Assembly: GCA_053919585.1 (NCBI GenBank)
Contig: CM132788.1
Length of the DNA stretch: 64,000 bases
Source: Euprymna scolopes
Lineage: Eukaryota
Direction: 5' to 3' (one strand)
The notes under the pieces were generated by a model, which was not told where the DNA came from, did no database searches, and saw nothing but the letters and a program-made list of their open reading frames with translations. Made by a program: the position numbers and the translations under genes. Below are positions 10,063 through 58,257 of the stretch, one piece after another; position 1 is the stretch's first letter, and each line of letters opens with the position of its first letter.

Positions 10063-13000
10063 CATGGAGGAGCAGTATATACCAAACAAATTCCGAGAAA
10101 AAGTCACACCAAAAGACACAGAGGAACAGAAGAAAATATAAAGAGCTCTAAACATATCAAAACTAAGCTGAAATCCTTATGCAGAGAGGAGGAGGAAAAC
10201 TCCAAAAGAATTATCGAAAGGAAGATAACCTGGCTGAAGAATCTACCAGAAAAAGAAACAAACGCACAAGTACCGAACATGACCAGTCAAACCTACCAAA
10301 AACTGAAACATACCCGATTTCAACAGCTGGGGAGATTCCAAAACAAAGGTAAGAAACGAGACAAACACCACTCTCAAACATACCCACACAATAGGCCAAA
10401 ACACACACAACGAAACGACCGGAACATATTCATACCATACACCCATGCTCACCAACTAACTAAACAAAAATTCCCATCTAGAACACCACACATCCACACA
10501 AGAACACAGACACAATACAAACACAAACACTACTACCAAAATGATCCTAAAAACAACATATCAACAACCGACAACCTACTACCACATGACAATACTAAAA
10601 GATACAACCTCCAACAACAATACGAAAATAGTTACTACCAACCACGTCACCCAACTCAGTCAAGAACCCTCTATCTCTTACCCCACCTCACCCACACAAA
10701 CCACCAAAAAATCCCCCTACTAAACAATTCCCACAGAAACAACCAAATGGAACAAAACCACCCCTATAGATACCACCCAACAAAAAACAATCTTTAGAAC
10801 ACCCACCCCTAGTACCCCACAGTACAAAACCGACCCCAAAAATATCCCCTACAAACACACAACCAATCCGAATACCCCAGATACCATCATAACCCACACA
10901 TACCTACAAAACGATACAACCCACGTCCCAACCGGATCAACGAAACTAACGACCCTCACAACCATTTTTTTTGGAATACCTCACAAAATGACAACACCAG
11001 TCCAGACAACAAAAAACCCAAAGTCATCAACCTATCTACAGAGACACTTACACAGGATGATATTGAAGTACTAAAACTAGGCCTCAAATTCGGCCCAACT
11101 TCCCAAAGTAAGATAGCAGAGTTAAAGAAAGACCTTGAAGAATTTGAACGCAAATTTAGACTCATAGATATACTTTATGACAGTGATAACACAACAGACG
11201 ACTCTCTAGTGAACAACAAATCAACATACTTCCCCAACAAACATAACAACACAAATGAACTAAATACCTTCTTTGAAACACTCTGGAGTCTCAACCCCCG
11301 ACAAAAAGAAACCCCCACCAGTAATCTAACACGAACACAAAATCAAGCACTTAAAAAATCCAACACTATAACAACTTAGTTATAAAGGAAGCAGCCAAAG
11401 CTAGTGCAGTGGTTATAATGAATAAGAACTTCTATAAAACAAATAATTTAGAATCACTAGAAAATGAAAATTATTACAAACTCATTAGCTCTTACATAGA
11501 CGACACAACCATATCTAAAATAACAAAACTCTGCACAACATACAATAGTACATTAACTAAAAAAGAAAAAGACTTCCATACAAACTTCACAACACAAACA
11601 AACATCTTCTATGGGCTACCCAACATACACAAATCTAACCAGGTAAGACATGCCATCAACATACAAAAGTCGGAGTACATAAGCACCCCAAACCCCAACG
11701 AGCTCACATTCAGACCCATAGTAGCAGCACCATCATGCCCAACACGCAGACTTAGCAACCTAATAGATATACTATTACAGTCCTTCACCAATATAGTCAG
11801 AAGTTTTGTAAGAGATGACACACACTTCCTTAGCTCCCTACCACAAGCAGTAGACAATGGGACAATACTAGCCACATTCGATGTTAGCAGTCTATATAGC
11901 AATAGCCCACACAATCTAAGAAAAGAAGCTATCGCATATTGGATTGACAAACATACACAGACTTTACACCCCAGATTCAACAAACAATTCGTGATTGATA
12001 GCATCGAAATAATCTTCAATAACAACTCCTTCCAATTCAATAAAGACAAATACGTCAAAATACTAGGCACAGCAATGGGTACTAAAATGGCACCGACATA
12101 TGCCACTCTTACACTCGCCTTCCTAGAAAGGATAGAGCAAAAGTACGGGCACACTATAAAAACACTCTTTATAAAATCTTGGAAAAGATGCCTAGACGAC
12201 TGCTTTATCCTCTGGAGAACCTCATGGGGGGATATCAAAGAACTCCACACCTTGCTAAAAAATCTACACCCAAAAATAAACTTCACACTAGAACAAAGCC
12301 CCACAGAACTACCTTTCCTAGACATCCTAGTAACAATCAAAAACAACAACATAATCACAGACATCTACCACAAACCCACAGACACTCAACAATGCCTCCA
12401 CTTCGAAAACCACCGTCCTAAAAACTGTCTAAAACCAATACCCTACTCCCTAGCACGTAGAGTCTGCAGCATAGTAACAGGCAGACACGTCCGTTCAACT
12501 AGGCTGAATGAACTACAAATAGCTCTGCGAAAAAGAGGATACTCACTTCCACTAATACAGAAAGGTATTGAACTGGCTGAAAAAATTCCAATCGACCAAC
12601 TAAGAACACCAAAAGAACACAACACGGAACAAATTTAAGCCTACGTCTCTACACACAACACAAACAACCGAGAAATATTCACACAGATAACAACAAACCT
12701 TATCCTCCTCAATCAGAACAACAAACTAAACAACATACTTAAAACAAGAAAAATAATTAAAAGCAAACGCCAACCTAAAAACTTAAAACACACCATAACT
12801 TCCTCAAAACTCGTCTCACACACTACAAAACGGGTTACAAAATGCAACAAACCGCGATGTGGGGAATGTTATATAATAATAGAAGGTAACATATACACAT
12901 TCAAAACCCCATCACAAACATTCAAAATAAAAAGGATCTAAATTGCACCTCCAGAAATGTAGAATATGCACTAAGATGCACAGCATGCAACAAATTCTAC

Positions 13001-14112: not shown

Positions 14113-17100
14113 TTTTTACACAGGCATCACCACATTGTCAAGGCCAAGATCCCACTAAAGGATAGGGATTAAAGAATGCACAGTAGTAATTGGACAATAT
14201 AGTAATAATCAGTAATGAAAATTCGGTAAATTTGATAATTTATATGGAACGGCTCATCCAGAACTTATTTACGTTAGACTTGAAGACAACCATATTGTAG
14301 TAAGCCGGAAAGCAGGAAAACGGAAGACAATTCGACAGGCATGCAGTTCTAAGAAACAAACTCTGTTCATGGAATCTACGATTAGGTTAAGGCACAGATA
14401 AAGAGTGGGGGAAATTATTGATAGTGTTTTCAGCTAGACGAGTGTTTCTTGTGAAAGTTTGGCGAGGGGGACCATAGACAGATGCTCAGTCGAACACTTT
14501 CCATGAAAATAACGGTACATCAGAGACAAACTCGCAACATCTCTTCTGTTAGATAGAGATTGCAGGGAAGAGAAAAAGACATATCCTACGAGGCTACGAG
14601 GTCTATTTTAACTCAATCAAGGCAAGACAAGTCCTTTCTAGCAGTTCCTGTCAAGATGTAGCAACAGTATTCCATCCCTGGAGTACCTGGCTCTTATATA
14701 AATAGAGAATTGCATCAGCAGTGAGATATCTACCGGAACGATTGAAAAATTCCACCATTTTTCCAGCGGCCTTGGCAACAGATTTGATGTACGTGTTCCA
14801 TTTAAGATCAGGAGTAATGCTCAAGCCCAGACGCTTGTCAAAACTTGAGGCCACCTGAAGACGAGAGGCATTCATTTCCATTGATGCCAGATGTGTATTA
14901 GGATGTTGATGATGTAAAGAGAGAAGCTTGGTTTTAGATGCATTAAAAGTAAACAACCACTCCTTTCCCCATTGTACTACGTGATCAAGATCAGAGGAGA
15001 GAGAATCGGACAGAACTTGGTCGTTTACCGTCTTAGATGTACTACCATAAATGGTAGTGTCGTCAGCATAAATGTCTACAAATGATGTACGGATGTGATT
15101 TGGAAGATCATTAATGTAGATCAGGAAAAGTGTTGGGCCCAGGATGGACCCCTGAGGAACACCAGCATTAATGATGTGAGCTTCGGATTTTTGCAACTCG
15201 ACTACCACTCTTATGGACAGATCAGAAAGAAATTATTTAATAATTGAGAACACATTTCCAGCTATACCATAGCTATAGATCTTGTGAAGTAAGCATTTAT
15301 GCAATATCCTATCAATACCTTTGGTCTGTCAAGAGCAATTGCCCTAGAAAGGTTGCCTCCGTCGAAAGATTTGCTAATCCTATGAGATATAACTGTAAGC
15401 ATATCTGATGTAGTTCTAACAGAACGGAAACCATATTGAGTGTCACTTAGAAGTTTTTTTTTTTTTTGTTGAGATGGTTGACTACTTCTGTATTTAACAC
15501 CGATTCGAGCAAATTACTCATGACGCACAGGATACTTATTGGCCTGTACTGAGAGGGGGATAAGCGATCACCTGAATTCTTAAATACAGGGAATACTAAT
15601 AAAATTTGCCACGGTGATGGACGCTATTCTCCTTAAGACGACGTTTAAACAGTTTTGTAAGTATGGGCGCTAGTTCAGGTTGAGGATTTCTGAGTACTAT
15701 AATTGGAATATCATCAGGGCAAGAATGAAGATTTTTGATTAACTTGGCAACATCACGTACTAATATATGTATATCACATAGCGTGTATTCTGATACAGCA
15801 GGAAATATTGAGGGTTGGCGGCCTCGGTCGCAAAGTGTAGAATTAGCTGCAAAGTTCTTGGAAAAGAGTTTGGCTTTGTTTGATGATGACGCGATTACTC
15901 AGGTCCATTGATGAGAGTTGGCATAGAGCACACGCTTCTGTTCAGGATTCTGTTTGCTATTTGCCAAAACTGGTGGGAACCAAGCCGCTGCTCAGCTACT
16001 TTGGACTAAACGCATTGAGCATACAACTTTCTTGCATTCTTTATTACTTTCTTACAATGGTTGCTGGCAGTCCTGAAAGCGGCTTTAGTTTCCATACATC
16101 TATTACGTTGGAAGCAGTGGAAAAAGGTAATTTCTGTGCTCCATGGCAGCAGCACATTCTGGAAAGAACCATGGCTATCTGTTAGGTTTTTGCTGGAACT
16201 TGTTGGAGGGTATGAAACGGTCGATACAATTAACCATTCCGTCAGGTATGATACTATAGATGACACATCCTTTTCATATAAATGCACGGCAGCTATCCCA
16301 GTCAGCCTTAGTGTATCGAAATACTGTACAATCGAGAGATACGTCTGGGGACTTATTACATTTCATTTTTATCTTAATTGATACAACAGAGTGGTTGGAA
16401 GATCCAAGAGAAGACAGAACAGAAACAGAACATAGTTCAGGGCAAGTTGTGAGAAAAAGGTCTAGTAGACTCGCATAGTGGTTGTCATGTTGGGCACACG
16501 GGTGAGTTCATGGGCAATCTGATTGAGGTCATAAGCAACGGAGAAATCATGACAGAACCTCCCCTCATTATCGGTCTTGTTTGAGTGGGTCAACCATTCC
16601 ACGTTGTGAACATAGAAGTTTCCACATACGTGAATGTTAGCTGAAGGATAAGCAGGTAGGAGTTGGTCAATTTTCTCAGATATGCTTTTAAAGATAGTAA
16701 CGCCGCTGTTTCGGGGGCGATAGAGAGTAAATATAAATGCAGTAGTGTGAGATAAAGCAACCCGGAAGCACATATAGGGTAAGTTAGGATCTTCCCTGGA
16801 GATGTCCCTACCACATGGAAGCCATGTTTAATATAGCCACATATTCCATGCCCATGGCAATCTTGGGGGCCAGATTTAGAAGTTAAGTTAGAGTATCCTT
16901 TAATTGCGAACTCTTCATGGTAAATAGCCTGTCCAATGCCAGTTTCGCTTAAAAATAAAGGGTCCGGGTTAGTCTCCTGTAATTGGATTTCAACCTGTGG
17001 AAGGTTGGAAAGTAGACCCCTGATGTTGGCGAAGGAGACATGGTAGTAGGGGTTTATGTTGAAAGTTGCAGAACCGGGTTTAATCATGGTTTTTTTCTTT

Positions 17101-17837
17101 AAACTTGTCATGATTAAATTTTGGAATTTGTGGACTAGGTCGTCAGATTTACTTAGAGCAGAACAGAGAGGGGAAACTAAGAGAGGAAAAGAAACGAATA
17201 TTTTTTGTAGCACATGATAAGGTAAAGCCGTAACAATTACCCACTAATATGGCATCGAGAGGCCCCACCAGAAGCTACTGCATTGTCCAGAATCCATTTA
17301 TCAAATGGCAATACAGCAGCCCCAGTACTTTGCACCTGCTGATAGGATAGCCTCCATAGTGGTTAATTCAAGGTTCGGGTCCCTGACTATCAGGCGGATA
17401 ACGTCAGCCCAGATAAAACGTTTACCTCCATCACTCTTACTAGTGACATGGCTACAAGGATAGACATAGAAACAGAACATTTCTGACATCTCTGCCAACT
17501 GTTCGCGCAAAATGCTGCCAACCGAGAAAACAGCTTTTTCTTCCCCCTTTGTCCGAAAAATCACTCATTAAAAAATAAGGAGTTAGAGGCAAATCAGGAG
17601 AAGCGAGAGCAACGTGAGCTGCCGATAAAGCATACACAATGCGTTTTCTACTGTACATTAAAAAATATTAAGTATTCTACTTAATAAAGTCCAACAGACG
17701 TGTTTAAGGGAAAGTATGGTAATAGATTCCCCTCTCACGAACTAAAAATGAGTACAATTACGTAATCTATTTTTGCAATCAACTTGGTAGATAAATAAAC
17801 ATTTATGGACAAGAAAAAAGCGAACATTTAATAAAAC
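14113..17837 (-). mobile_element. CR1-group LINE family A, near full length (APE + RT, decayed), inserted in Gypsy pol
   Basis: SFANIRGL..LSET (APE), LYRP..CGNFYVH, GVPQGSILGPTLFLIYINDL, YADD; A-tail at about 14109-14117. Confidence 0.92.
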
Positions 17838-20993: not shown

Positions 20994-21664
20994 TTTTCAA
21001 AAATATAATAGCTTTGTATGTATATAATATTTTTATTCATACACAAACACACAAACACACACACAAACACACACACACGCACGCACACACACATATTTTA
21101 TGCATTTCCACAAAATACAGTTTCAGTGAAATAAAACAATTAGTACTATACGAAGAGTACAATGGGTATTCTGGCTTTATTATAAGTTTCACTAACGGAT
21201 TTATCATTTTAATTTAAGGTATTTGTCATTTCCTATCGTGATCCTGCTCCTGCTATTATATTCCAAAAACGTTTGTGAAAATTCATGAAATATATCTATT
21301 TTGTGCTCATTCCACTGAAACGCAGCCATATCATGGAATCAATTTTCTTTAGACTGAAAGATGCTCATCTATTTTTTTTTTTTAGTTTTTGTAAATTTGG
21401 AATATTTTTTAGAGTTTTATAAATAACTAGCGGGCCTACCCGGCTTTGCTCGGGATAGTATAAAAATAAGAAAATTGAATTTGGTTTAGTAATATATGTG
21501 TTATTCTTATGAGATAGGAATTTGTATGTTTATGTATCATTTGATATTTCGAAGAAATGAATATTTTACCTACATAAGACGGGTATTACAAGTATGAAAT
21601 AATTGTATCTTACCTAGGGTAGGTAATTTACAGCATGTATATGAAAGGACGGGTAATATGCAAC

Positions 21665-22005
21665 ACATTTATCTCATCAAATCCCAAGCGATGCCAGGTA
21701 TGTTACTAATATATATTCTCGCCTATTTCATTAAATCCTGGCCAACGCTGGGTGTTTTGCTAGTATATATCTCAATTAATCTCATTAAATCCTGGGTGAC
21801 GCAAGGTATTCTGTGAGTAAATATTTCAATCAATCTTATTCAATCCAAGGCAACGCCAAGTATTCTGCTAGTATATATTTGCATCTATCTCATTACATCC
21901 CAGGCGACCGTGTATTCTGCTTTCATACATTTGCATGTATCTAATTGAATCCAGGGTGACTCTGGGTAATCTGTAAGTATATATGTGGACGTATCTCGTT
22001 AAATC
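21665..22005 (+). repeat. Tandem array of about 53-bp units (about 6 copies), each a GC hairpin + ..GCTAGT
   Basis: Example unit: tttcattaaatcctggccaacgctgggtgttttgctagtatatat. Confidence 0.8.
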
Positions 22006-23720
22006 CCATAATTCTTGGATTGTTACAAATTTCGACAATTTAACCCACATTATCGCTCACCTGTCTAAAATAATAACTTTGAGACATTGTCTTGGCTGGT
22101 TTTTCATTACAAGCACATCATCCAAATAACTCACATCTCACCATTTTTATAATTGTTGTATATGTAACTATTTTCAACAACCAGGTCACATGATTTCACT
22201 TACATTATCGCCGCCACTCTTACTAAAAACAAACTTTGATACATAGGCTATGGTATGTTACTAATTTCGACTACCACTTTTCATGAGTAAATCCAGATTA
22301 TCGCCCCCATCTATCAGTAAAATAATAACTTTTAGACATGGTATGGCTGGTTATTTCATTACAAACCCACCAAAGAAGTAAGTTACATTATATCATTCCT
22401 CATAATTCTTGGATATGTTACTAATTTTGACACTCATTTTTAATGAAGTAACCAAAAAAATCGCAACACCTTACTAAAATAATAACTTCCATACATTGTC
22501 TTGTCTGTCTACTTCATTACGAATACACCAGTCAAATAACTCACATTTCATCATTTTTCATAATTTTGGGATATGTTGCTAATTTCAAACGTCGTTTTTT
22601 CTGAGTTCAATCCCTCTCCTCTTACTAAAATAATACATTTGAGAATTTTTGGGCTGTTTATTTCATAAGAAACACATCAATAAAATACCTCACATTTCAT
22701 CATTTTTTATAATTCTTGGATATGTTATAAATTTCGACAATCAAATTTAATGGGGGCGCACATCTAATCGCCCAGTTATTACTAAAATCATAAATTTGCT
22801 ACATTGACTGGGCTGTTTATTGCATTATAAACACACACATCAACTAACTAAAGCTTTATTTTTCATAATTCTTGGATAGGTTACTAATTTCGACAATAAT
22901 TTTTCATGAGTTAATCCAAATAATCGCCACTTCTAGCCTGTCTATTTCATTACGAACACACCAATCAAATAACTCACATTTAATCATTTTTCATAATTCT
23001 TGGATATGTTACTAATTTCGACAATCATTGTTTATGATTTAACCCACATAATCGACCCCCCTTACTAAAATACTAACTTTGATACAGTATCTGGTATGTT
23101 TATTTTACTATAAAAACTCCAATCAAATAACTTACATTTAACAACATTTCATAATTCTTGGATATGCTACTAATTTCGACAATCGTTTTTCATAATTTAA
23201 TTCACATAATCCCGTCCCCTTTTGCTAAAATAATAACTTTGATACATTGTCTCTGGTTATTTCATGATAAACTCACCAATCAAATAACTCACATTTTACA
23301 TTTTTCATAATTCTATGATATGTTACTAATTTCGACAATAATTTTCCATGATTTAACACATATAATCGCCCCTCCCTTACTTAAATAACAACCAGGCGAC
23401 ATTGTCAAGGGTGTCTATTTCATTACAAACATACACATCAAATAAGTAACATTTCATCATTTTTCATAATTCTTGGATATGTTACTCATTTCGACAATCG
23501 TGTTTCATGAGTTTACCCACATAATTCCCTTCCTCTTACAAAAATAATACATTTAAGACATCGTCCGTGCTGGTAATTTCATTACAAACACACCAATCAC
23601 ATAACTCACATTTCATCCTTTCTCACTTTTCTTGGATCTGTTACCAATTTCTACACTCATTTTTAATGATGTAACCCACAAAATCGACCCCCTCTTACTA
23701 AAATATTAACTTTAAGACAA
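22006..23720. repeat. Satellite of about 155-158 bp, about 11 copies
   Basis: cataattcttggatatgttactaatttcgacaa recurs at about 22007, 22401, 22559, 22708, 22864, 22992, 23150, 23306, 23465. Confidence 0.92.
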
Positions 23721-24881
23721 CGACTGTATATTATTCTAAAGGTATTCGACAGGAAGCTACATCCAAGGGGGTCTCTCGCAAATTTTATCAATGATTGTAT
23801 ATTATTCTAATGGAATCTGACAGTGAAGCTACATCGAAGGGAGGCCACTTGCATATTATAAGAATGATTGTATATTAATCTAATGGTATTGGAGAATGAA
23901 GCTACATCCAAGGGAGGTCACTTGCATATAATGACAATGAATGTATATTCATATAATGGACATCTATAATGAAAAAACATCCAAGGGAGATCAATTGCAT
24001 ATTACACCAATTATGGTGTATTAGTCTCATGTTATACAACAATGATGCTACATCCAAGGGAGGGCACCTGCATATTATGACATTGATTGTATATACGTCT
24101 AATGGAATTCGCCAATGACGCTACATCCAAAGGGGGCCACTCGCATATTGTAACAACGATTGTCTATTAATCTAATGGAATTCGACAATAAAGCTACATC
24201 CAAGGGAGGTCACCACATATTATAACAATTATTGCATATTAATCTAATGGAATTCGACAATTTGGCTGCACTCAAGGGAGGTCACTTGCATAGTATAACG
24301 ATAATTGTCTATTAATCTAATGGAATCCAACAATGAAGCTACATCAAAGGGAGGTCACCACATATTATAACAATGACTGTGTATTAATCTAATGTAATTG
24401 GGCAATGTAGCTACACCAAGGGAGGTCACTTCCATAGTATAACAATGATTGTCTATTAATCTAATGTAATCCGCCAATTAAGCTACACCGAAGGGAGGTC
24501 ACTTGCATATAATAACAATGATTGTATATTAATATAATGATATTATAAATGAAGCTACATCCAAGGGAGGTAACTTGCATATAATAACAATGGATGTATA
24601 TTAATCTAATGGAATTCGACAATGAAGCTACATCCAAGGTAGATCACTTGCATATTATAACAATTATTGTATATTAATCTAAATGAATTCGACAATGAAG
24701 CTACACCCAAGGGAGGTCACTTGCATATTATAATAATGATTGTATATTAATCTAATATAATTCGACAATGAAGCTTCATCCAAGAGAGGTCACTTGCATA
24801 TTATAACAATGATTGTATATATATCTAATGGAATCTGACAATGAAGCTACATCCAAGGGAGGTCACTGGCATATTATAACA
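23721..24881. repeat. 73-bp minisatellite, about 16 copies
   Basis: catccaaggg at 23760, 23832, 23905, 23978, 24051, 24124 and onward. Confidence 0.95.
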
Positions 24882-24883
24882 TA

Positions 24884-24961
24884 CAAGGTGTTCCAAAAGT
24901 CTTGGGCACATTAAGCAGATATGAGGACTTGAAATGTGCCCAAGACTTTTGGAACACCCTG
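24884..24961. mobile_element. 78-bp Tc1/mariner-type MITE
   Basis: 29-bp TIR ca(a/g)ggtgttccaaaagtcttgggcacatt with 1 mismatch, 20-bp spacer, TA on both sides. Confidence 0.8.
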
Positions 24962-25245
24962 TATATACTGCGCAAGCACCTTCTATTTTTTTCAAATCGG
25001 ACATATACTGCACAAGCACCTCCAAAATTCTCAAATCGGACCTATAATGCACAAGAACCTTCAAAATTTTCACATCAGGCCTATACTGGACAAGCACCTT
25101 CTAAATTTTTCAAATTGGACAAATACTGCACAAGCACCTTAAAAATTGTCAAGTCTGACCTATAATGCACAAGCACCATCAAAGGTTTTCAAATCGGACC
25201 TATACTGCACAAGCACCTTCAAAATTGTCGAATTGGAACTATACT
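24962..25245. repeat. Minisatellite of about 39 bp, about 7 copies
   Basis: Unit tatactgcacaagcaccttcaaaattttcaaatcggacc. Confidence 0.92.
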
Positions 25246-25640
25246 TCCCCTATGTCATACACTCCCAGGCGACGCTTAGTATTCTGCTAGTACACATTCA
25301 CCTATGTCATACAATCCTGGGAAACGCGGGCCGTCCTGCTAGCGTATATACACCTACTTTATCCAATCCTGGGCTATGCCGGGTATTTTGCTAGTACATA
25401 TATCCACCTATGTAATCTATCCCGGGCGACACTGGGCATTAGGCTGGTACATATATTCACCAATTTTTTCCAATCCCAGGCGTCGCCGAGTGTTCGTCTA
25501 GGAAAAATTACATGACTTTTATCCAATGCCAGGCCATGCCTGGTAATCAGCTAGTATATATGTTCTGCTAGTGCTATGTCAAACAATTGAGGGCGACGCT
25601 GGGTATTTTGCTCGTACATACACACCAATTTTATCCAATG
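25246..25640 (+). repeat. Second tandem array of about 52-bp hairpin + GCTAGT units (7-8 copies)
   Basis: Example unit: cctactttatccaatcctgggctatgccgggtattttgctagtacatatat. Confidence 0.85.
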
Positions 25641-27210
25641 CGCATGTTTTTTTTTTACTTGGTCTTTTACTTTGGACATACACACATACATACATTTTCG
25701 CTTTTATATATATAGATTTTTCATAGAGTTTATGGATTAAATCCTCGGCGATTATTTTAGTTCATTATTGTATGTGTATGTAATAGTGCGGTTAGCTAAT
25801 CAATTGTAAGTTTAGGGAATAAAAGTAGGGTTCAGAGGTAAATGATCGTCTGTAAGACGATGGCTTTAACCAAAGTATGGCAACTGATGAAAGTGCGACT
25901 GGAAAAGCGGTTTGTATGTCCTAATTTTTGTGGACGTCTGTAAATAAGCGTATTCAACTTAATTAGAATGTCTTCAAGCCACACCTGTCAATTTGAATTT
26001 GTACGGACAATATTTAATAATAATTTGGTGGATAGTGATATAGAGTCTTATTGCCAAGATGAGCTACACAGGGAGGTAGTAAAATAAAGAGAATGCATTG
26101 ACATCAGTAAAGGCGCCCTCGTTCGTAAGTGTTTCTAATTAGTTATCATTAACGAGCGATGTCAGTTTACGCGGTTTGTTCTAACAACCCCACCCTTATA
26201 ATGTCGTGTCGACAAAAGCAAACGTAATGATGTAAATTATTACTAATGAGATACCAAACAAGACATGAATGAAAACGTGCACTAATTCACTACCAATGGG
26301 GCAATGTTTCGCATCACATGATCTCGAGAAAATATAATCCAATTCTTTAGCCAATAATTCTTACAGCTGATTTATATTATTCTAGTTACTCGAGCTACTA
26401 TATACGTCGTTAATGATATGCTCAATACACTTATCACAGTAAGATTTTTTTTCAACTTGGGGTGCATTTTCCAGAAGTTGGAAATATATACATGTTTTGT
26501 ATTCCAGTCACCAACTATGTTATGCACACATACTTTATATTTTATTATTTGTCAGTATCGCCTGTACTAACGGAAAAAATATTCACTCATGTACACTGCT
26601 TGTGATTCATACAGTTCTTGTATAAATTCGGACAACTTTAAACTTGAACTTATTTAGATGTATAGTATTACTAGTCATTACTATATATTCATATATAAGA
26701 AACATAAGATTTTTACACTCTAATAAAACTAAAAATGTGAGAGAAGAAAATATGCATTTTTTAAAACCAAAACACCTGGTCCTTAAGAAACAATGATGGA
26801 AATTGCATTAAAAATGTTGGGCCCGAGGATTGCGTCTTCCTATACAAATGGTTCTTAGAAATCTGGGGTTCAGATTGCTCATTGGCTGTTTTAATGCCCT
26901 TAATTGAGTTTTACTCTTGAGATTCCCCCCACAAAAAAACAAAATGACAAACGGATAAATGTGGCGACATAGGCGTTAAGGCAATACTACCGAACCTTGA
27001 GATCACGCGATTATCGGACAATTATCGAAGAGCCTACCATGTTTGTCGTGTATTGCGTTATATGACTTTATTCTGTTGTAACAAGTAATCGAGGGTTTTT
27101 AAATGGCGAAATATTTACTTTCTTAAGGTCAAAATCTCACAGTCTTTACACTTGATTATGTTTCGCCATACGCGCTTTAAAATCTGCGTGTTTTGAGGTA
27201 ACCGTATATA

Positions 27211-27269
<59 letters not shown>

Positions 27270-27270
<1 letters not shown>

Positions 27271-28100
27271 TAGCAAAAGTACCCGTCGGTGACTGGGTTC
27301 ACAAACAGCATACAGAAAAAAAAGGAATCTGATTTATGATAGTATGATAGGTTATGAAAAGGAAGGGTTGTAAAGAGATAGCTTCGAATTTGGGATTATC
27401 AAAACCAAAGAAAAATATGATGAAAGTAAAAATAAAATAGATAAACCCCATAATTTCGAACTTGGGATAATCAAAACCAAAGAAAAATATGATGAAACTA
27501 AAAATAAAATAGATAAACCCCATAATTTATTATATCATACCTGTTCACACTGAAACATTATCACAATATTCTTTGGATCTATATTTAAAAAAAAAAAAAC
27601 CTGTAAAACTTTGTGACATATTTCCATTCAATGGAGGTCAGGTGCGAACGAACCTCCCATAATTTTATTATACCATATTTCTTCAAACTGAAACATAATT
27701 ATCAAAGTATACTTACGCAGATAGATATGAAAAGTCTTTATTAAAGTGTGTGCCTATTTCGATCTTATGGAGGCCACGTGCGAACGCAGACCCCACAATT
27801 TTATTATACCATCCATATTTAAGTTAAAACATACTTATCAAAGTATGTACATCTATATCAAAAACACTTGTAAACGTTTCTTTTTTACTTTTAAGTTTCT
27901 TTCCATACTGTGTGGAGCAGGCGCGAGCGCAGACCCCACAATTTTAATGAACCACCGTTCTGCAAGAACAAACATACCCAGTCCTGTCTCGATTGATCTT
28001 CTATCATTATATGGGATCAGTTTTTTTTTTAAATAGTCAACTATATAGGAGCCAATTCGTGACCAGTCACACACACAGACATTCAGCTTTATATTATAAA
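27270..28100 (-). mobile_element. Non-autonomous Helitron-like element H3 with internal tandem repeats
   Basis: CTAG at 27270 next to hairpin cccgtcggtgactggg, abutting (TA)n; 72-bp tandem duplication 27383-27526; about 137-bp unit (cccataattttattatacc) x4; cacacagac..gctttatattata 5' end. Confidence 0.65.
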
Positions 28101-42289: not shown

Positions 42290-43335
42290 AGATGCAGCTG
42301 TGCGTCTGTGGGTCAAGGATAGCAGTTTTCTCTAAGTTTGTATACTTGGGTAGCACACTGAGTATGCCTGGTGCCCTTGATAATGTATCGTTACGGATCA
42401 GCAAGGCAAGTGATGCCTTCGGAAAGTTGGACGGGCGTTTGTGGAAACATCATGGGATTTTGCTGCCAACAAAGATTAAGGTATATGATGCATGTGTTCT
42501 CTCTACTCTTCTCTATAGTAGTAAAACTTGGACAACATACAGGGAGCATTTGAGACGTCTTGAGCGGTTTCACCAGATGTGCCTACGGCGAATATTAGGG
42601 GTGGGTTGGCAGATGTATGTCAGTGATGTGGAGATGCTTGATCGGACTCAATGTCTTAGCATTGAGGTCTACGTTATTAAGCACAGATTGAGATAGAGTG
42701 GGCATGTGGTGAGGATGTTAGACAGTCGACTTCCAAAACAACTCCTTTATGGTGAGCTCGCCGAGGGAAGACGTCTGGCTCAAAAGCCTTAATTGAGATT
42801 TAAGGATTGTTTAAGATCCACCTTAAAAAATGTGAGATTGATAAAAGACCATGGGAGTGTCTTGCTTTGGATCGCGGATGGTGGAGAAGGACACTGCGGG
42901 TAGGTGTGGGCAAGTTTGAGGTGGATCGAAGCCAGTATGAGCAGCTGCATCGCGATATACGGAAAGGGAGAGTGAAAGGAGCCGTTGATGGTAGGGGGAG
43001 CCAAAATGGTCTGAAGTGTGAGGTGTGCGGAAGAATACGTCTTAGCAGAGCTGGCCTGACGAGTCAAAACAGAGTTGAGCTGATGTATGGGCGGATGTAC
43101 AAAACGGATGTACAAAACGACAGGCGGTTATAAACAACATTTGATCCTGCCTAGAAAAGAACAGCAAGGATGTGCTGCTAGTGATGCACATGTCTTTACA
43201 ATGTGTGCTAAGGAATGCCAGAGTTTAGCAAGGTCTAAACGCCACATTCGTGCAGCCCATCACTAAATGTTTTCGTGTTTCTATATACCTTTTTTGTGCT
43301 ATATCAAGTGATATCAATGTTCGAAAACGAATTTG

Positions 43336-55177: not shown

Positions 55178-56354
55178 TCGATAGATCCTCTTTTGTACAC
55201 GGTCACCGCTGTATTATTCTGTTTCCTTCTTGATTCAGTAGATTTATCTCGACATATAGTTAGGCATTTAATCATCCGTTAGCTTAATAACATTTCTTTA
55301 TCTCTATTATAAAGAGGTTGTTAGACAATATCCCTTTTCGCGTGATATCAACAATTTCCACTTATTTTCTCATCAGATTGCAATATTTCCTTTTCCAGGC
55401 CATTTCCTCTTTACCTAGCCCCGATTTAAGCAAGGGTTTTTACGCTCATATATTTTAAAGTTGGCTACAAATTCTCCAATATTCTTTCGGGAGATGTTAC
55501 TTCACATTATCCAATTTATCCTAAGGAATCTGGAGAGTCTTCACAGTTATTTACTAAATTTATATTAACATACGTGTATTAAGGTTTGTAACCAGGCGTA
55601 ACTATCTTTGTGTACTTGTAATTTTCTCTTTATTCTGGTAGATGTCTGAGTGTATTATGTTCGTTCTTTTTCTATTAAAACTTTAACATGTTTAACTTAA
55701 GTTGTCATTCATTAGTACGTTTCATTTATTTAATATTTTACTACATTACTAATTAGACATTCTCAAATGAATAAGTACTATTGATGAGTAATTAGTAAAA
55801 AATGTAGAGTTCTCTGTATTTTGACTGTCATCAATATTACTTAAATTCCAGTAGTTCCATGTAAATCGCCTGTCAAAAGATTCTCTTAACCAATTCTAAC
55901 TTCCAGCAGTCGTAAATATTTTTTCTAAAAAGTTTATTAGCAACCAGCCTCCACAGTGTTTTAATAAACTTCGGATGCCATATAATTGTATTTTGTCAGC
56001 TTTTGACATTTATTTGAACTGCCATGATTGTTTTGTATCTTATTACACGATATTAGCGCTTTCACTTGTCAAGGGAGTTCAAGTAAGATTAACTGTCTTA
56101 CATATTAGATTGGTGCAAAAAATTATGTTCTTTTGACGTATATATATTATAACTTATATATATTGTCTGGGCTGATTATTTAATTACAAACACATAAATT
56201 AATTCCGGGTATTCTCATAGTATCCACCTATCTTATCCAATCCCAGGTGACGCCACATATGTTGCTAGTATATATCTTTAACCTATCAAATTCGATACCG
56301 GGTGACACTGAGTATTTTGTTACTACTTGTTGTCCACTTATCTCATTCAAACCC

Positions 56355-56765
56355 GGGACTGACTTCATGCCCGCCAACCCACTATTAAAAATATACATGA
56401 AATAAAGTAATGTTTGAATCGTAACCTGTTTCAGCAATTTCTGGAACTGAGTTTATATCCCCAACCCGCTGCTAAAAATATATATGAAATAATGTAATGT
56501 CTAAATAGTAAATTGTTTTAGCCCTACCTCACTGTCATAAATATACATTAAATAAAGTAATGTTTAATGCGTAAACAGTTTCATCCATTTCCTGGACTGA
56601 TTTCATATCCCCCACACTACTGTTAAAAATATACATGGAATAAAGTAATGTTTAAATCGTAACCGGGTAAAGTAATTTCCGGGACTGAATTCATATCCCC
56701 GCTCCACTGTGTAAAATATATTGTAAATAAAGTAATGTTTAAATCATAAACTGTTTCAGCAACTT
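56355..56765. repeat. Minisatellite of about 88 bp, about 5 copies
   Basis: aaatatacatgaaataaagtaatgttt at about 56388, 56477, 56538, 56626, 56713. Confidence 0.9.
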
Positions 56766-57322: not shown

Positions 57323-57364
57323 GAACATATACTACACTTTGATCTAGGCCAAAAGGCCAAGAAG
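57323..57364 (-). pseudogene. U2: U2 snRNA 5' fragment (about 42 nt)
   Basis: Minus strand CTTCTtGGCCTTTTGGCctAGATCAAAGTGTAGTAtaTGTTC versus U2 CTTCTCGGCCTTTTGGCTAAGATCAAAGTGTAGTATCTGTTC; includes stem-loop I and the GUAGUA branch-pairing sequence. Confidence 0.88.
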
Positions 57365-58257
57365 AGCAAATCATTTTTGTTAGCTTTGCCGCAACAGCGA
57401 CACCAATTTTTTTTTTTTTTTTTTAATTTAAACGACCCGGATATAAGCGTGACACAAAAAAGAACACACGCGCTATCGTATTAATATATAGATTGCTAGT
57501 GTGAAAATACAATAACCTATTTTTCCTCAATTGCATCTTGAACAAGCGAATCTTTTTCTTTATAATATATCAAGGGCACTTGTAGTATTAAAAATAATAT
57601 GGTTAATACTATCGTAAAAGGTTCGGTTAGGATATAAACATTCTTTACAGTACAATCATGTTCCACCATTTTTCTGATGTTAAAATAGTCAGATGTGAAA
57701 TACAAGATAAGTAGGTTTTAAATTCTTGCGAAAATGAAATGTAGGTCTTTCAAAAATTTCGAAATTCTTCTGATGTTTCAGCATTGGCTTTTGCTTTATT
57801 TTCCCACGTTATCTGCGACGGTGACTTTACTGTGCTTTCTATAATAAAAAAAAAAAATAAAAAAAAAAACTATTTAGTGAAGATACGGAAAAACAAAAAA
57901 CAATACGACAATGCCTTAAGCTAAGCATAAGAAAATGCAATGTCGAAGTTAACGCGTTAGTAATATTGAACAAATTAGAATACATAAAAAAAGTATTTAA
58001 GATGCATGCCGGTATTGCAAAAGGAAAGAAATAGGGCAAATTACTTCATTTTAAAATTGAGTCAACATATATTCTTAGCAGTTACCTATTAAAGTTGCGC
58101 GTTTATCGATGAAAAATGTCTCAAAATAATAGTAAACTATAAAAATATTGCTATAAAGTTAATCGAACCTTTTTGAAACTTCGTAATTATGTCACCTTGA
58201 GAAACACAATTCTAATTGAACCTATGTATAGGAAACCTACATAAATATCATTTATAA

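What the first reader, a model, noticed from the sequence alone, without database searches (positions are those of the whole stretch)
21665..25640. Internal arrays are inverted tandem copies of the element's own 3' terminator
Seen: the true 3' end reads atcccgagcaaagccgggtaggcccgCTAGt on the minus strand; the 52-53-bp units on the plus strand read about aatcccaggcgacgccgggtattctgCTAGt, with the same hairpin, spacing and CTAG. About 6 copies lie at 21665-22005 and 7-8 at 25246-25640. Known: hairpin + CTRR is the rolling-circle termination signal. Inference: banks of opposite-strand terminators, from repeated end read-through and re-capture or a nested plus-strand element; they could give alternative ends, bidirectional mobilisation or RepHel decoy sites.
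Basis: partly seen in the sequence, partly recalled or inferred. Interest (0 to 1): 0.72.

Follow-up and report, generated by a model that had tools for sequence, protein, structure and literature searches.

The report
Helitron end-derived repeats inside a Helitron
Two repeat arrays inside a non-coding rolling-circle transposon (Helitron) are decayed, backward-pointing copies of the stop signal that ends Helitrons in this mollusc genome; they look like inherited relics, not working stop signals.

Summary
Window 21427-25716 (minus strand) is a 4,290-bp non-autonomous canonical Helitron (A|TC...CTAG|T). It belongs to a family with at least hundreds of copies. Six units lie at 21680-22001 and seven at 25261-25636, all on the plus strand. 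Their first ~31 nt match the element's 3' end (z 5.1 for the window copy, 6.3 for the family consensus). They match the genome's standard Helitron end better still (z 7.7; that end has 12,262 exact copies). The spacer before CTAG is 1 nt shorter in the units. "Its own terminator" is not shown; "a Helitron terminator of this genome" is.

The functional reading is not supported.
- Stem arms plus CTAG are no better kept than other columns (p 0.36).
- There is no covariation, and stem changes are mostly one-sided CpG-type transitions.
- No unit consensus keeps the full stem.
- Unit CTAGs do not mark boundaries: 0 of 335 exact A2 units, and 1 of 862 T-spacer units abuts a Helitron 5' end, against 9.5% of standard ends.

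The arrays were already present and diverged in the family's master copy. Best reading: a minisatellite born from an antisense Helitron 3' end and carried passively. The first stage noted this same stretch twice (as this finding and as the four-satellite cassette note); it is not reported from other DNA.

The parts
21427..21457 (-). The carrier Helitron's own 3' end: short palindrome, 6-nt spacer, CTAG, then host T
   Evidence: All 19 family copies that keep the CTAG are followed by T and then by unrelated flanks. The window copy differs from the family consensus at about 3 of the last 31 nt.
21427..21679 (-). 3' tail of the carrier (254 bp), with faint remains of further units just before 21680
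   Evidence: at least 1,720 first-look candidates in the genome; the 40 scored are 92-94% identical over the full length. Searches show the sequence.
21680..22001 (+). Array A: six 52-54-bp units, antisense to the carrier; their palindromes are mostly decayed
   Evidence: The six positions are orthologous in 19-20 copies (92-95% identity).
22002..23719 (.). 159-bp satellite, about 11 copies
   Evidence: No significant similarity to the 53-bp unit. Array length varies between copies.
23717..24881 (.). 73-bp satellite, 16 copies
24964..25245 (.). 39-bp satellite, about 7 copies
25261..25636 (+). Array B: seven 52-58-bp units, antisense to the carrier; better preserved than array A
   Evidence: Only B6 folds clearly (-6.3 kcal/mol, z -1.8).
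25637..25716 (-). 5' region of the carrier. The first 46 nt are a Helitron 5' end (TC...) shared with another family.
   Evidence: 12 other loci start with the same 5' end, each after unrelated flanks. Nine show A directly before TC (one more reads TCTA after CTAG); two directly follow another Helitron's CTAG.
56203..56324 (+). Two to three further units of the same kind, followed by an 88-bp satellite (separate cassette)
   Evidence: E 3e-7, 0.005, 0.2. The carrier's ends and orientation were not resolved.

Best explanation
The arrays are a minisatellite that arose from a Helitron 3' end lying antisense inside an ancestral non-autonomous Helitron. Each unit has two parts. The first is about 31 nt of termination signal: AT, a 5-bp palindrome with a GCAACG/GCGACG loop, TA, a T-rich spacer, CTAG and T. 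The second is about 22 nt of AT-rich sequence of unknown source that starts with TATATAT. The unit was amplified in tandem and diverged. It ended up as three blocks: A, B and a third block C that most copies carry between the 73-bp and 159-bp satellites. All this happened before the family spread, so every copy inherited the same diverged units. Today they ride along as passengers. They are not maintained as hairpins and are not used as element ends. Shown: the homology, the inverted orientation, inheritance from the master copy, the decay pattern, and the absence of boundaries at unit CTAGs. Inferred: how the antisense end got in (nested antisense insertion, or read-through capture of a neighbouring antisense end with its (TA)n flank) and how it was amplified (slippage, unequal exchange or rolling-circle copying).
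For: The standard end pattern has 12,262 exact genome hits against 0 for the reversed control. Unit versus ends gives z 5.1 to 7.7. The family consensus end and the family-level units are cleaner than the window copy. All 17 long copies share the layout and unit positions, while units are only 56-87% alike among themselves and copies are 92-95% alike. For the stem, 52 of 75 cells are Watson-Crick against a shuffle mean of 53.3; 22 of 29 departures are transitions, centred on the two CpGs; no consensus unit keeps all five pairs. Arms plus CTAG are no better kept than other columns (p 0.36). In the boundary tests, T-spacer units followed by a 5' end number 1, against 861 with the normal continuation. 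For standard ends the count is 685 of 7,229. For the A2 unit, 335 have the normal continuation and 0 have a foreign one. Two 5'-truncated copies break inside a unit or 13 nt past its decayed CTAG site, not at the CTAG itself. A free Helitron-like end with a T-rich spacer abutting (TA)n lies at about 27261-27300 on the minus strand, which shows that such an end-plus-flank source exists. Nested antisense Helitrons, multiple termini and read-through capture are all documented (PMC5148889, PMC4778049).
Against: The 31-nt core is somewhat better kept than the rest of the unit (pairwise identity 0.757 against 0.660). That would fit weak constraint or a later origin of the remainder. The boundary tests rely on exact-match patterns for a few unit types and would miss rare or old events. 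All copies descend from one master, so the inverted layout is a single event and says little about selection. No intermediate form was found (a single antisense end, or a full nested element).
Confidence: 0.7

Rival explanations
1. The arrays are working banks of opposite-strand terminators. A transposase that enters on the other strand, for example by read-through from an antisense neighbour, stops at a unit's hairpin plus CTAG. This would give alternative ends or two-way mobilisation.
For: The units carry the full signal in the right order for the plus strand, and 10 of 16 family-level units keep CTAG. The loop, which matters in Helraiser (PMC4778049), matches that of true ends. The genome holds many intact RepHel reading frames.
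Against: None of 335 A2 units marks a boundary, and only 1 of 862 T-spacer units abuts a Helitron 5' end, against 9.5% for true ends. Truncated copies do not end at unit CTAGs. There is no extra conservation or covariation, and the stems are decayed.
Confidence: 0.06
2. The arrays act in cis without being ends. They could be extra RepHel binding sites (decoys or loading pads). Or, being complementary to the 3' end on the transposed strand, they could act as fold-back partners that bring the 3' end near the 5' region, as the asymmetric inverted repeats of Helentrons may do.
For: The units are complementary to the terminus on the sense strand over about 31 nt. In the window copy, array B lies 80 nt from the 5' end. 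The core is slightly better kept than the rest of the unit. The family reached high copy number.
Against: In full-length copies array B lies more than 1 kb from the 5' end. The own-end variant (CCCGAG) is not mirrored in the units. Conservation is not focused on arms, loop or CTAG. No direct test was possible.
Confidence: 0.1
3. The arrays began as rolling-circle concatemers of a minimal Helitron: a joined 3' end and 5' end of about 53 bp, copied round and round. This concerns origin only and is compatible with the units being relics today.
For: Head-to-tail CTAG|TC junctions and tandem runs of short Helitrons (about 440 to 630 bp) are common in this genome. Units continue after CTAG with TATATAT, close to the 5' end's TCTATATAT.
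Against: The unit remainder is not significantly similar to the 5' end (p 0.21) or to sequence upstream of true ends (p 0.34 to 0.56). The C of the 5' TC is absent in all units. TATATAT is equally well explained as a (TA)n host flank.
Confidence: 0.15
4. The resemblance is chance or convergence: a GC-rich palindromic satellite that merely looks like the terminus.
For: In a blind scan of the window the terminus scores only E = 1.5. Predicted hairpins are weak for units and true ends alike.
Against: Shuffle tests give z 5.1 to 7.7. Among the family-level units, 17 of 18 hairpin bases match the standard end in the best-kept units, with CTAG and T following in register apart from the spacer-length difference. 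The unit profile by itself picks up clean family termini at E below 1e-3.
Confidence: 0.02

Closest known systems
Non-autonomous Helitrons/Helentrons that carry internal satellite-like arrays (DINE-1/DINE-TR1 in Drosophila, Cg170-type elements in the Pacific oyster, Helitron Y4_CE in C. elegans)
   Same: Conserved ends, an interior made of tandem repeats, several unrelated satellite families in one element, array length varying between copies, and spread of satellites through the genome by the element (PMC12628747, PMC8268682, PMC4595182).
   Different: Here one of the satellites is itself derived from the Helitron termination signal and lies antisense to the carrier. I found no such origin stated in the papers read.
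Helitrons with multiple termini, and tandem arrays of truncated Helitrons made by rolling-circle amplification (Xiong, Dooner and Du 2016 as cited in PMC12628747; Fusarium FoHeli, PMC5148889)
   Same: Repeated Helitron ends inside or beside an element. Nested insertion in the opposite orientation has been proposed as a source of composite elements.
   Different: The published cases are repeated 5' ends with a single 3' end, in the same orientation as the element. Here 3' ends are repeated, as 53-bp units, in the opposite orientation, and no 5' end is detectable in the unit.
The Helraiser right terminal sequence (hairpin plus CTAG terminator) and 3' end bypass
   Same: A palindrome a few nucleotides upstream of CTAG, an AT target, head-to-tail junctions, and new ends arising by read-through (PMC4778049).
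   Different: The units are internal, inverted, decayed and not found at boundaries. The palindrome here has only 5 bp per arm, against 19 bp overall in Helraiser.
Helentron/Helitron2 asymmetric terminal inverted repeats
   Same: Sequence near the 5' side that is complementary to the 3' subterminal region.
   Different: This element has TC/CTAG ends and an A|T target (the canonical Helitron type). The complementary sequence is a tandem array, and in full-length copies it lies more than 1 kb from the 5' end. The features of Helentrons are from my own knowledge (Thomas and Pritham 2015, cited in PMC12628747) and were not tested here.

Membership tests
Canonical Helitron, non-autonomous | 5' end TC and 3' end CTRR | tested here: met
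   TC at 25716 and CTAG at 21427-21430 on the minus strand. CTAG is kept in 19 of 20 family ends listed.
Canonical Helitron, non-autonomous | Short palindrome a few nucleotides upstream of the 3' end | tested here: met
   The standard end has arms CCCGG/CCGGG. The family end has 4 pairs plus one mismatch, 6 nt before CTAG. Predicted stability is low.
Canonical Helitron, non-autonomous | Insertion between A and T without target-site duplication | tested here: met
   A precedes TC and T follows CTAG in all 19 copies. Flank similarity of the window copy is not significant (p 0.70). No empty site was examined.
Canonical Helitron, non-autonomous | Many copies with unrelated flanks; no coding capacity | tested here: met
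   At least 1,720 first-look candidates, and 40 of 40 scored copies at 92-94% identity. There is no open reading frame of 70 aa or more inside 21427-25716.
Canonical Helitron, non-autonomous | An autonomous RepHel partner in the same genome | tested here: inconclusive
   Pfam Helitron_like_N gives 6,421 candidates with open frames up to 1,603 aa. Whether those elements carry the same ends was not checked.
Functional Helitron 3' terminator (applied to the 53-bp units) | Lies at an element boundary, with unrelated sequence after CTAG | tested here: not met
   0 of 335 for the A2 unit. 1 of 862 T-spacer units abuts a 5' end, against 685 of 7,229 true ends. The two truncated copies do not end at the CTAG position of a unit.
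Functional Helitron 3' terminator (applied to the 53-bp units) | Palindrome maintained (pairing preserved, compensatory change) | tested here: not met
   52 of 75 cells are paired, no more than in shuffles. There are only two doubly changed pairs. 22 of 29 changes are one-sided transitions. No unit consensus is fully paired.
Functional Helitron 3' terminator (applied to the 53-bp units) | Recognised and cut by RepHel | not testable with these tools
   Needs a biochemical or transposition assay.
Tandem truncated Helitrons from rolling-circle amplification | Units contain a Helitron 5' end and lie in the same orientation as the flanking 3' end | tested here: not met
   No significant 5' end similarity (p 0.21). 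The units are inverted relative to the carrier's end.
Transposon-borne satellite (internal arrays of Helitrons) | Tandem arrays between conserved element ends, shared by many copies | tested here: met
   the same order of arrays in 17 long copies. The 73-bp and 159-bp arrays vary in length, and the six units of array A are fixed.
Helentron / Helitron2 | T|T target and asymmetric terminal inverted repeats at the very ends | tested here: not met
   A|T target with TC/CTAG ends.

The most novel reading that the evidence does not exclude
The antisense terminator copies are a cis-acting device. On the single-stranded transposition intermediate they are complementary to the 3' end, and they also repeat the RepHel recognition loop. 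They could therefore hold the 3' end in a fold-back or recruit extra transposase. That would help a non-coding, satellite-filled element out-compete its autonomous partner: a canonical Helitron that has reinvented something like Helentron-style inverted repeats.
Probability: 0.07. Interest if true: 0.7.

Novelty: new variant of a known kind. Interest (0 to 1): 0.38.

Why it matters
Helitrons that carry satellites are well known, but where those satellites come from is usually unclear. Here one satellite can be traced to the transposon's own kind of termination signal, turned around and amplified. This is a clean example of a transposon end seeding a tandem repeat, which then spread to hundreds or thousands of loci. 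It also gives a natural set of decayed and intact terminator variants. The 12,262 exact standard ends, the family's mismatched end and the 16 unit types could be used to define what RepHel needs in a terminator. It does not show a new mechanism of mobilisation.

Tried and rejected
1. 159 bp as three 53-bp units: the 159-, 73- and 39-bp satellites show no significant similarity to the unit on either strand (z -1.8 to 1.8). A local 14-of-15 match to unit A1 at the junction was not significant.
2. Homology beyond the 31-nt core to the element's own subterminal sequence, to standard subterminal sequence, or to the 5' end: p 0.34, 0.56 and 0.21.
3. An apparent 20-bp direct repeat flanking the window copy is chance (p 0.70).
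4. Rfam scan of the window at gathering thresholds: no hits.
5. Thermodynamic hairpin test: both true ends and units fold weakly (z about 0), so folding energy does not discriminate.
6. The second cassette at 56203-56324 as independent support for the inverted layout: its carrier's ends could not be found, and its U2 fragment has the opposite orientation relative to the units, so it gives no support.
9. Read laying was not used: the DNA holders are contigs and cannot show circles or ends.
Full report
WHAT IS THERE. The window is part of a 5.9-Gb genome (G000:C6). Public runs that share the sequence include rows labelled mollusc metagenome. On the minus strand, 21427-25716 is bounded by TC (preceded by A) and by CTAG (followed by T). 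Read on the plus strand, the interior runs as follows:
- a 254-bp tail;
- six 52-54-bp units (array A, 21680-22001);
- a 159-bp satellite;
- a 73-bp satellite;
- a 39-bp satellite;
- seven 52-58-bp units (array B, 25261-25636);
- 80 nt of 5' region.
There is no open reading frame of 70 aa or more inside the element.

IT IS A REAL, HIGH-COPY HELITRON FAMILY. The 254-bp tail has at least 1,720 first-look candidates in the genome, and all 40 scored copies are 92-94% identical over the full length. Seventeen copies fetched with 10 kb of sequence share the same order of arrays. Most also carry a third block of the same units (array C) between the 73-bp and 159-bp satellites. The 73-bp and 159-bp arrays vary in length between copies, whereas array A always has the same six units. 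In the 19 family copies that keep the CTAG, it is followed by T and then by unrelated sequence.

The first 46 nt of the window copy are a Helitron 5' end that also starts another family. In 12 loci it follows unrelated flanks; nine show A directly before TC (one more reads TCTA after CTAG), and two follow directly after another Helitron's CTAG. Those junctions showed the standard 3' end of this genome: CCCGGGCAACGCCGGGTA, then 5-10 nt, then CTAG. That pattern has 12,262 exact hits, against none for the reversed control. The Rep domain family PF14214 has 6,421 candidates, with open frames up to 1,603 aa. Flanking similarity around the window copy is chance (p 0.70).

THE OBSERVATION. MAFFT places the reverse complement of the terminus in register with the 13 units. 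The unit majority sequence aligns to the last 31 nt of the element with one gap.
- Window copy: score 13.5 against 6.67 +/- 1.34 for dinucleotide shuffles (5 of 5000 reach it).
- Family consensus end: z 6.3 (1 of 5000).
- Standard genome end: z 7.7 (0 of 5000).
A profile built from the units alone picks up clean family termini at E below 1e-3. It scores the mutated window terminus at only E = 1.5 in a blind scan of the window. Homology is limited to about 31 nt. The remaining 22 nt or so of the unit is not significantly similar to the element's own subterminal sequence, to standard subterminal sequence, or to the 5' end (p 0.34, 0.56, 0.21). So the units are inverted copies of a Helitron 3' signal. 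Whether the source was this element's own end cannot be decided. The arms and loop fit the standard end better. The AT just upstream fits the own end. The T-rich 5-nt spacer fits neither.

ARE THEY MAINTAINED OR USED? I grouped 224 unit instances from the fetched loci into 16 orthologous positions (A1-6, C1-3, B1-7) and took the family-level sequence of each. Units are 56-87% alike among themselves, while copies are 92-95% alike. The arrays were therefore old when the family spread.
- Conservation by column: arms plus CTAG 0.833, other columns 0.811, permutation p 0.36. The block from the hairpin to CTAG ranks 8th of 53 cyclic blocks. Pairwise identity is 0.757 in the core and 0.660 in the remainder, a mild difference that is not focused on the functional bases.
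- Pairing: 52 of 75 stem cells are Watson-Crick. Column shuffles average 53.3, and 3,962 of 5,000 reach the observed value. Of 29 departures from the ancestral arms, 22 are transitions, clustered at the two CpGs. No unit consensus keeps all five pairs.
- Folding: predicted single-strand folds are weak for true ends and units alike. Only B6 stands out (-6.3 kcal/mol, z -1.8).

BOUNDARY TESTS. True ends in this genome often abut the next Helitron's 5' end. Of 7,229 exact standard ends, 685 (9.5%) are followed by the exact 5' start. In the fetched sample, at least 7 of 19 family ends are followed by a Helitron 5' end. For units with the T-rich spacer the count is 1, against 861 with the normal array continuation. 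For the best-kept array A unit (A2), 335 exact copies continue normally and none has both following bases changed. Two 5'-truncated family copies break inside a unit or 13 nt past its decayed CTAG site, not at the CTAG itself. The units therefore do not behave as ends at the sensitivity of these counts.

ORIGIN (INFERRED). Arrays B and C are closer to each other (0.76) than either is to array A (0.69-0.70). This fits one old array that was split and separated by other satellites. The other satellites are unrelated to the unit. After CTAG the units run on as TATATAT. A free Helitron-like end with a T-rich spacer abutting (TA)33 lies at about 27261-27300 on the minus strand. An end plus its (TA)n flank is therefore a plausible source. 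It could have been internalised antisense by nested insertion or by read-through capture, both of which are documented (PMC5148889, PMC4778049). A rolling-circle concatemer of a minimal joined-end Helitron is also possible. It fits the many head-to-tail chains and the short tandem Helitrons seen here, but it has no statistical support.

COMPARISON WITH WHAT IS KNOWN. Helitrons and Helentrons with internal satellites, several satellite families in one element, tandem truncated Helitrons and multiple 5' termini are all described (PMC12628747, PMC8268682, PMC4595182, PMC5148889). The hairpin-plus-CTAG terminator and its bypass are experimentally established for Helraiser (PMC4778049). In the papers read I did not find a minisatellite whose monomer is the 3' terminator itself, inverted within its carrier. 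The literature search was limited to open-access text.

VERDICT. The functional part is not supported. This is a new variant of a known kind and is of moderate interest.

Noticed in passing
L029:1468-1560 (-), L032:1472-1520 (+), and many ends listed: Helitrons in this genome very often sit head to tail, with a precise CTAG|TC junction. Of exact standard ends, 9.5% are followed by the exact 5' start, and at least 7 of 19 family ends in the sample are followed by a Helitron 5' end. Runs of short Helitrons about 440-630 bp apart also occur (for example L043 7990/8421/8867, and C1:68860301/68860842/68861373).
   Followed up: partly
L034-L048, about 60-250 nt upstream of array B (sense orientation); window 25650-25670 keeps only a stub: Full-length family copies carry one or two fragments of the U2 snRNA 5' region, antisense to the element, within a repeat of about 190 bp. 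The window copy lacks them: its 46-nt 5' end is joined almost directly to array B, so it looks like a deletion or chimeric derivative.
   Followed up: partly
window 56203-56765 and 57323-57367: A second cassette: 2-3 terminator-like units followed by an 88-bp satellite. Nearby lies a U2 snRNA 5' fragment that is sense on the minus strand, the opposite arrangement to the main family. No standard Helitron end was found near it.
   Followed up: partly
window 27261-27300 (-), next to (TA)33 at 27205-27269: A Helitron-like 3' end with a T-rich spacer (GGGTACTTTTG then CTAG) directly abuts a TA microsatellite. It resembles the spacer and downstream part of the 53-bp units.
   Followed up: no
window 21612-21630: The element's tail holds a 7-bp-arm palindrome (TTACCTA GGG TAGGTAA) that contains a CTAG, and two GACGGGTA motifs 69 bp apart. 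The motifs may be remains of still older units.
   Followed up: no
window 11409-12638 (+), 14651-17213 (-), 42292-42696 (+): Reverse-transcriptase-like open reading frames of retroelements (a 409-aa frame, plus fragments with LINE-like motifs) flank the Helitron region. They are unrelated to the finding.
   Followed up: no
G000 genome-wide: Many apparently intact RepHel reading frames (1,486-1,603 aa without stops) suggest recently active autonomous Helitrons.
   Followed up: no
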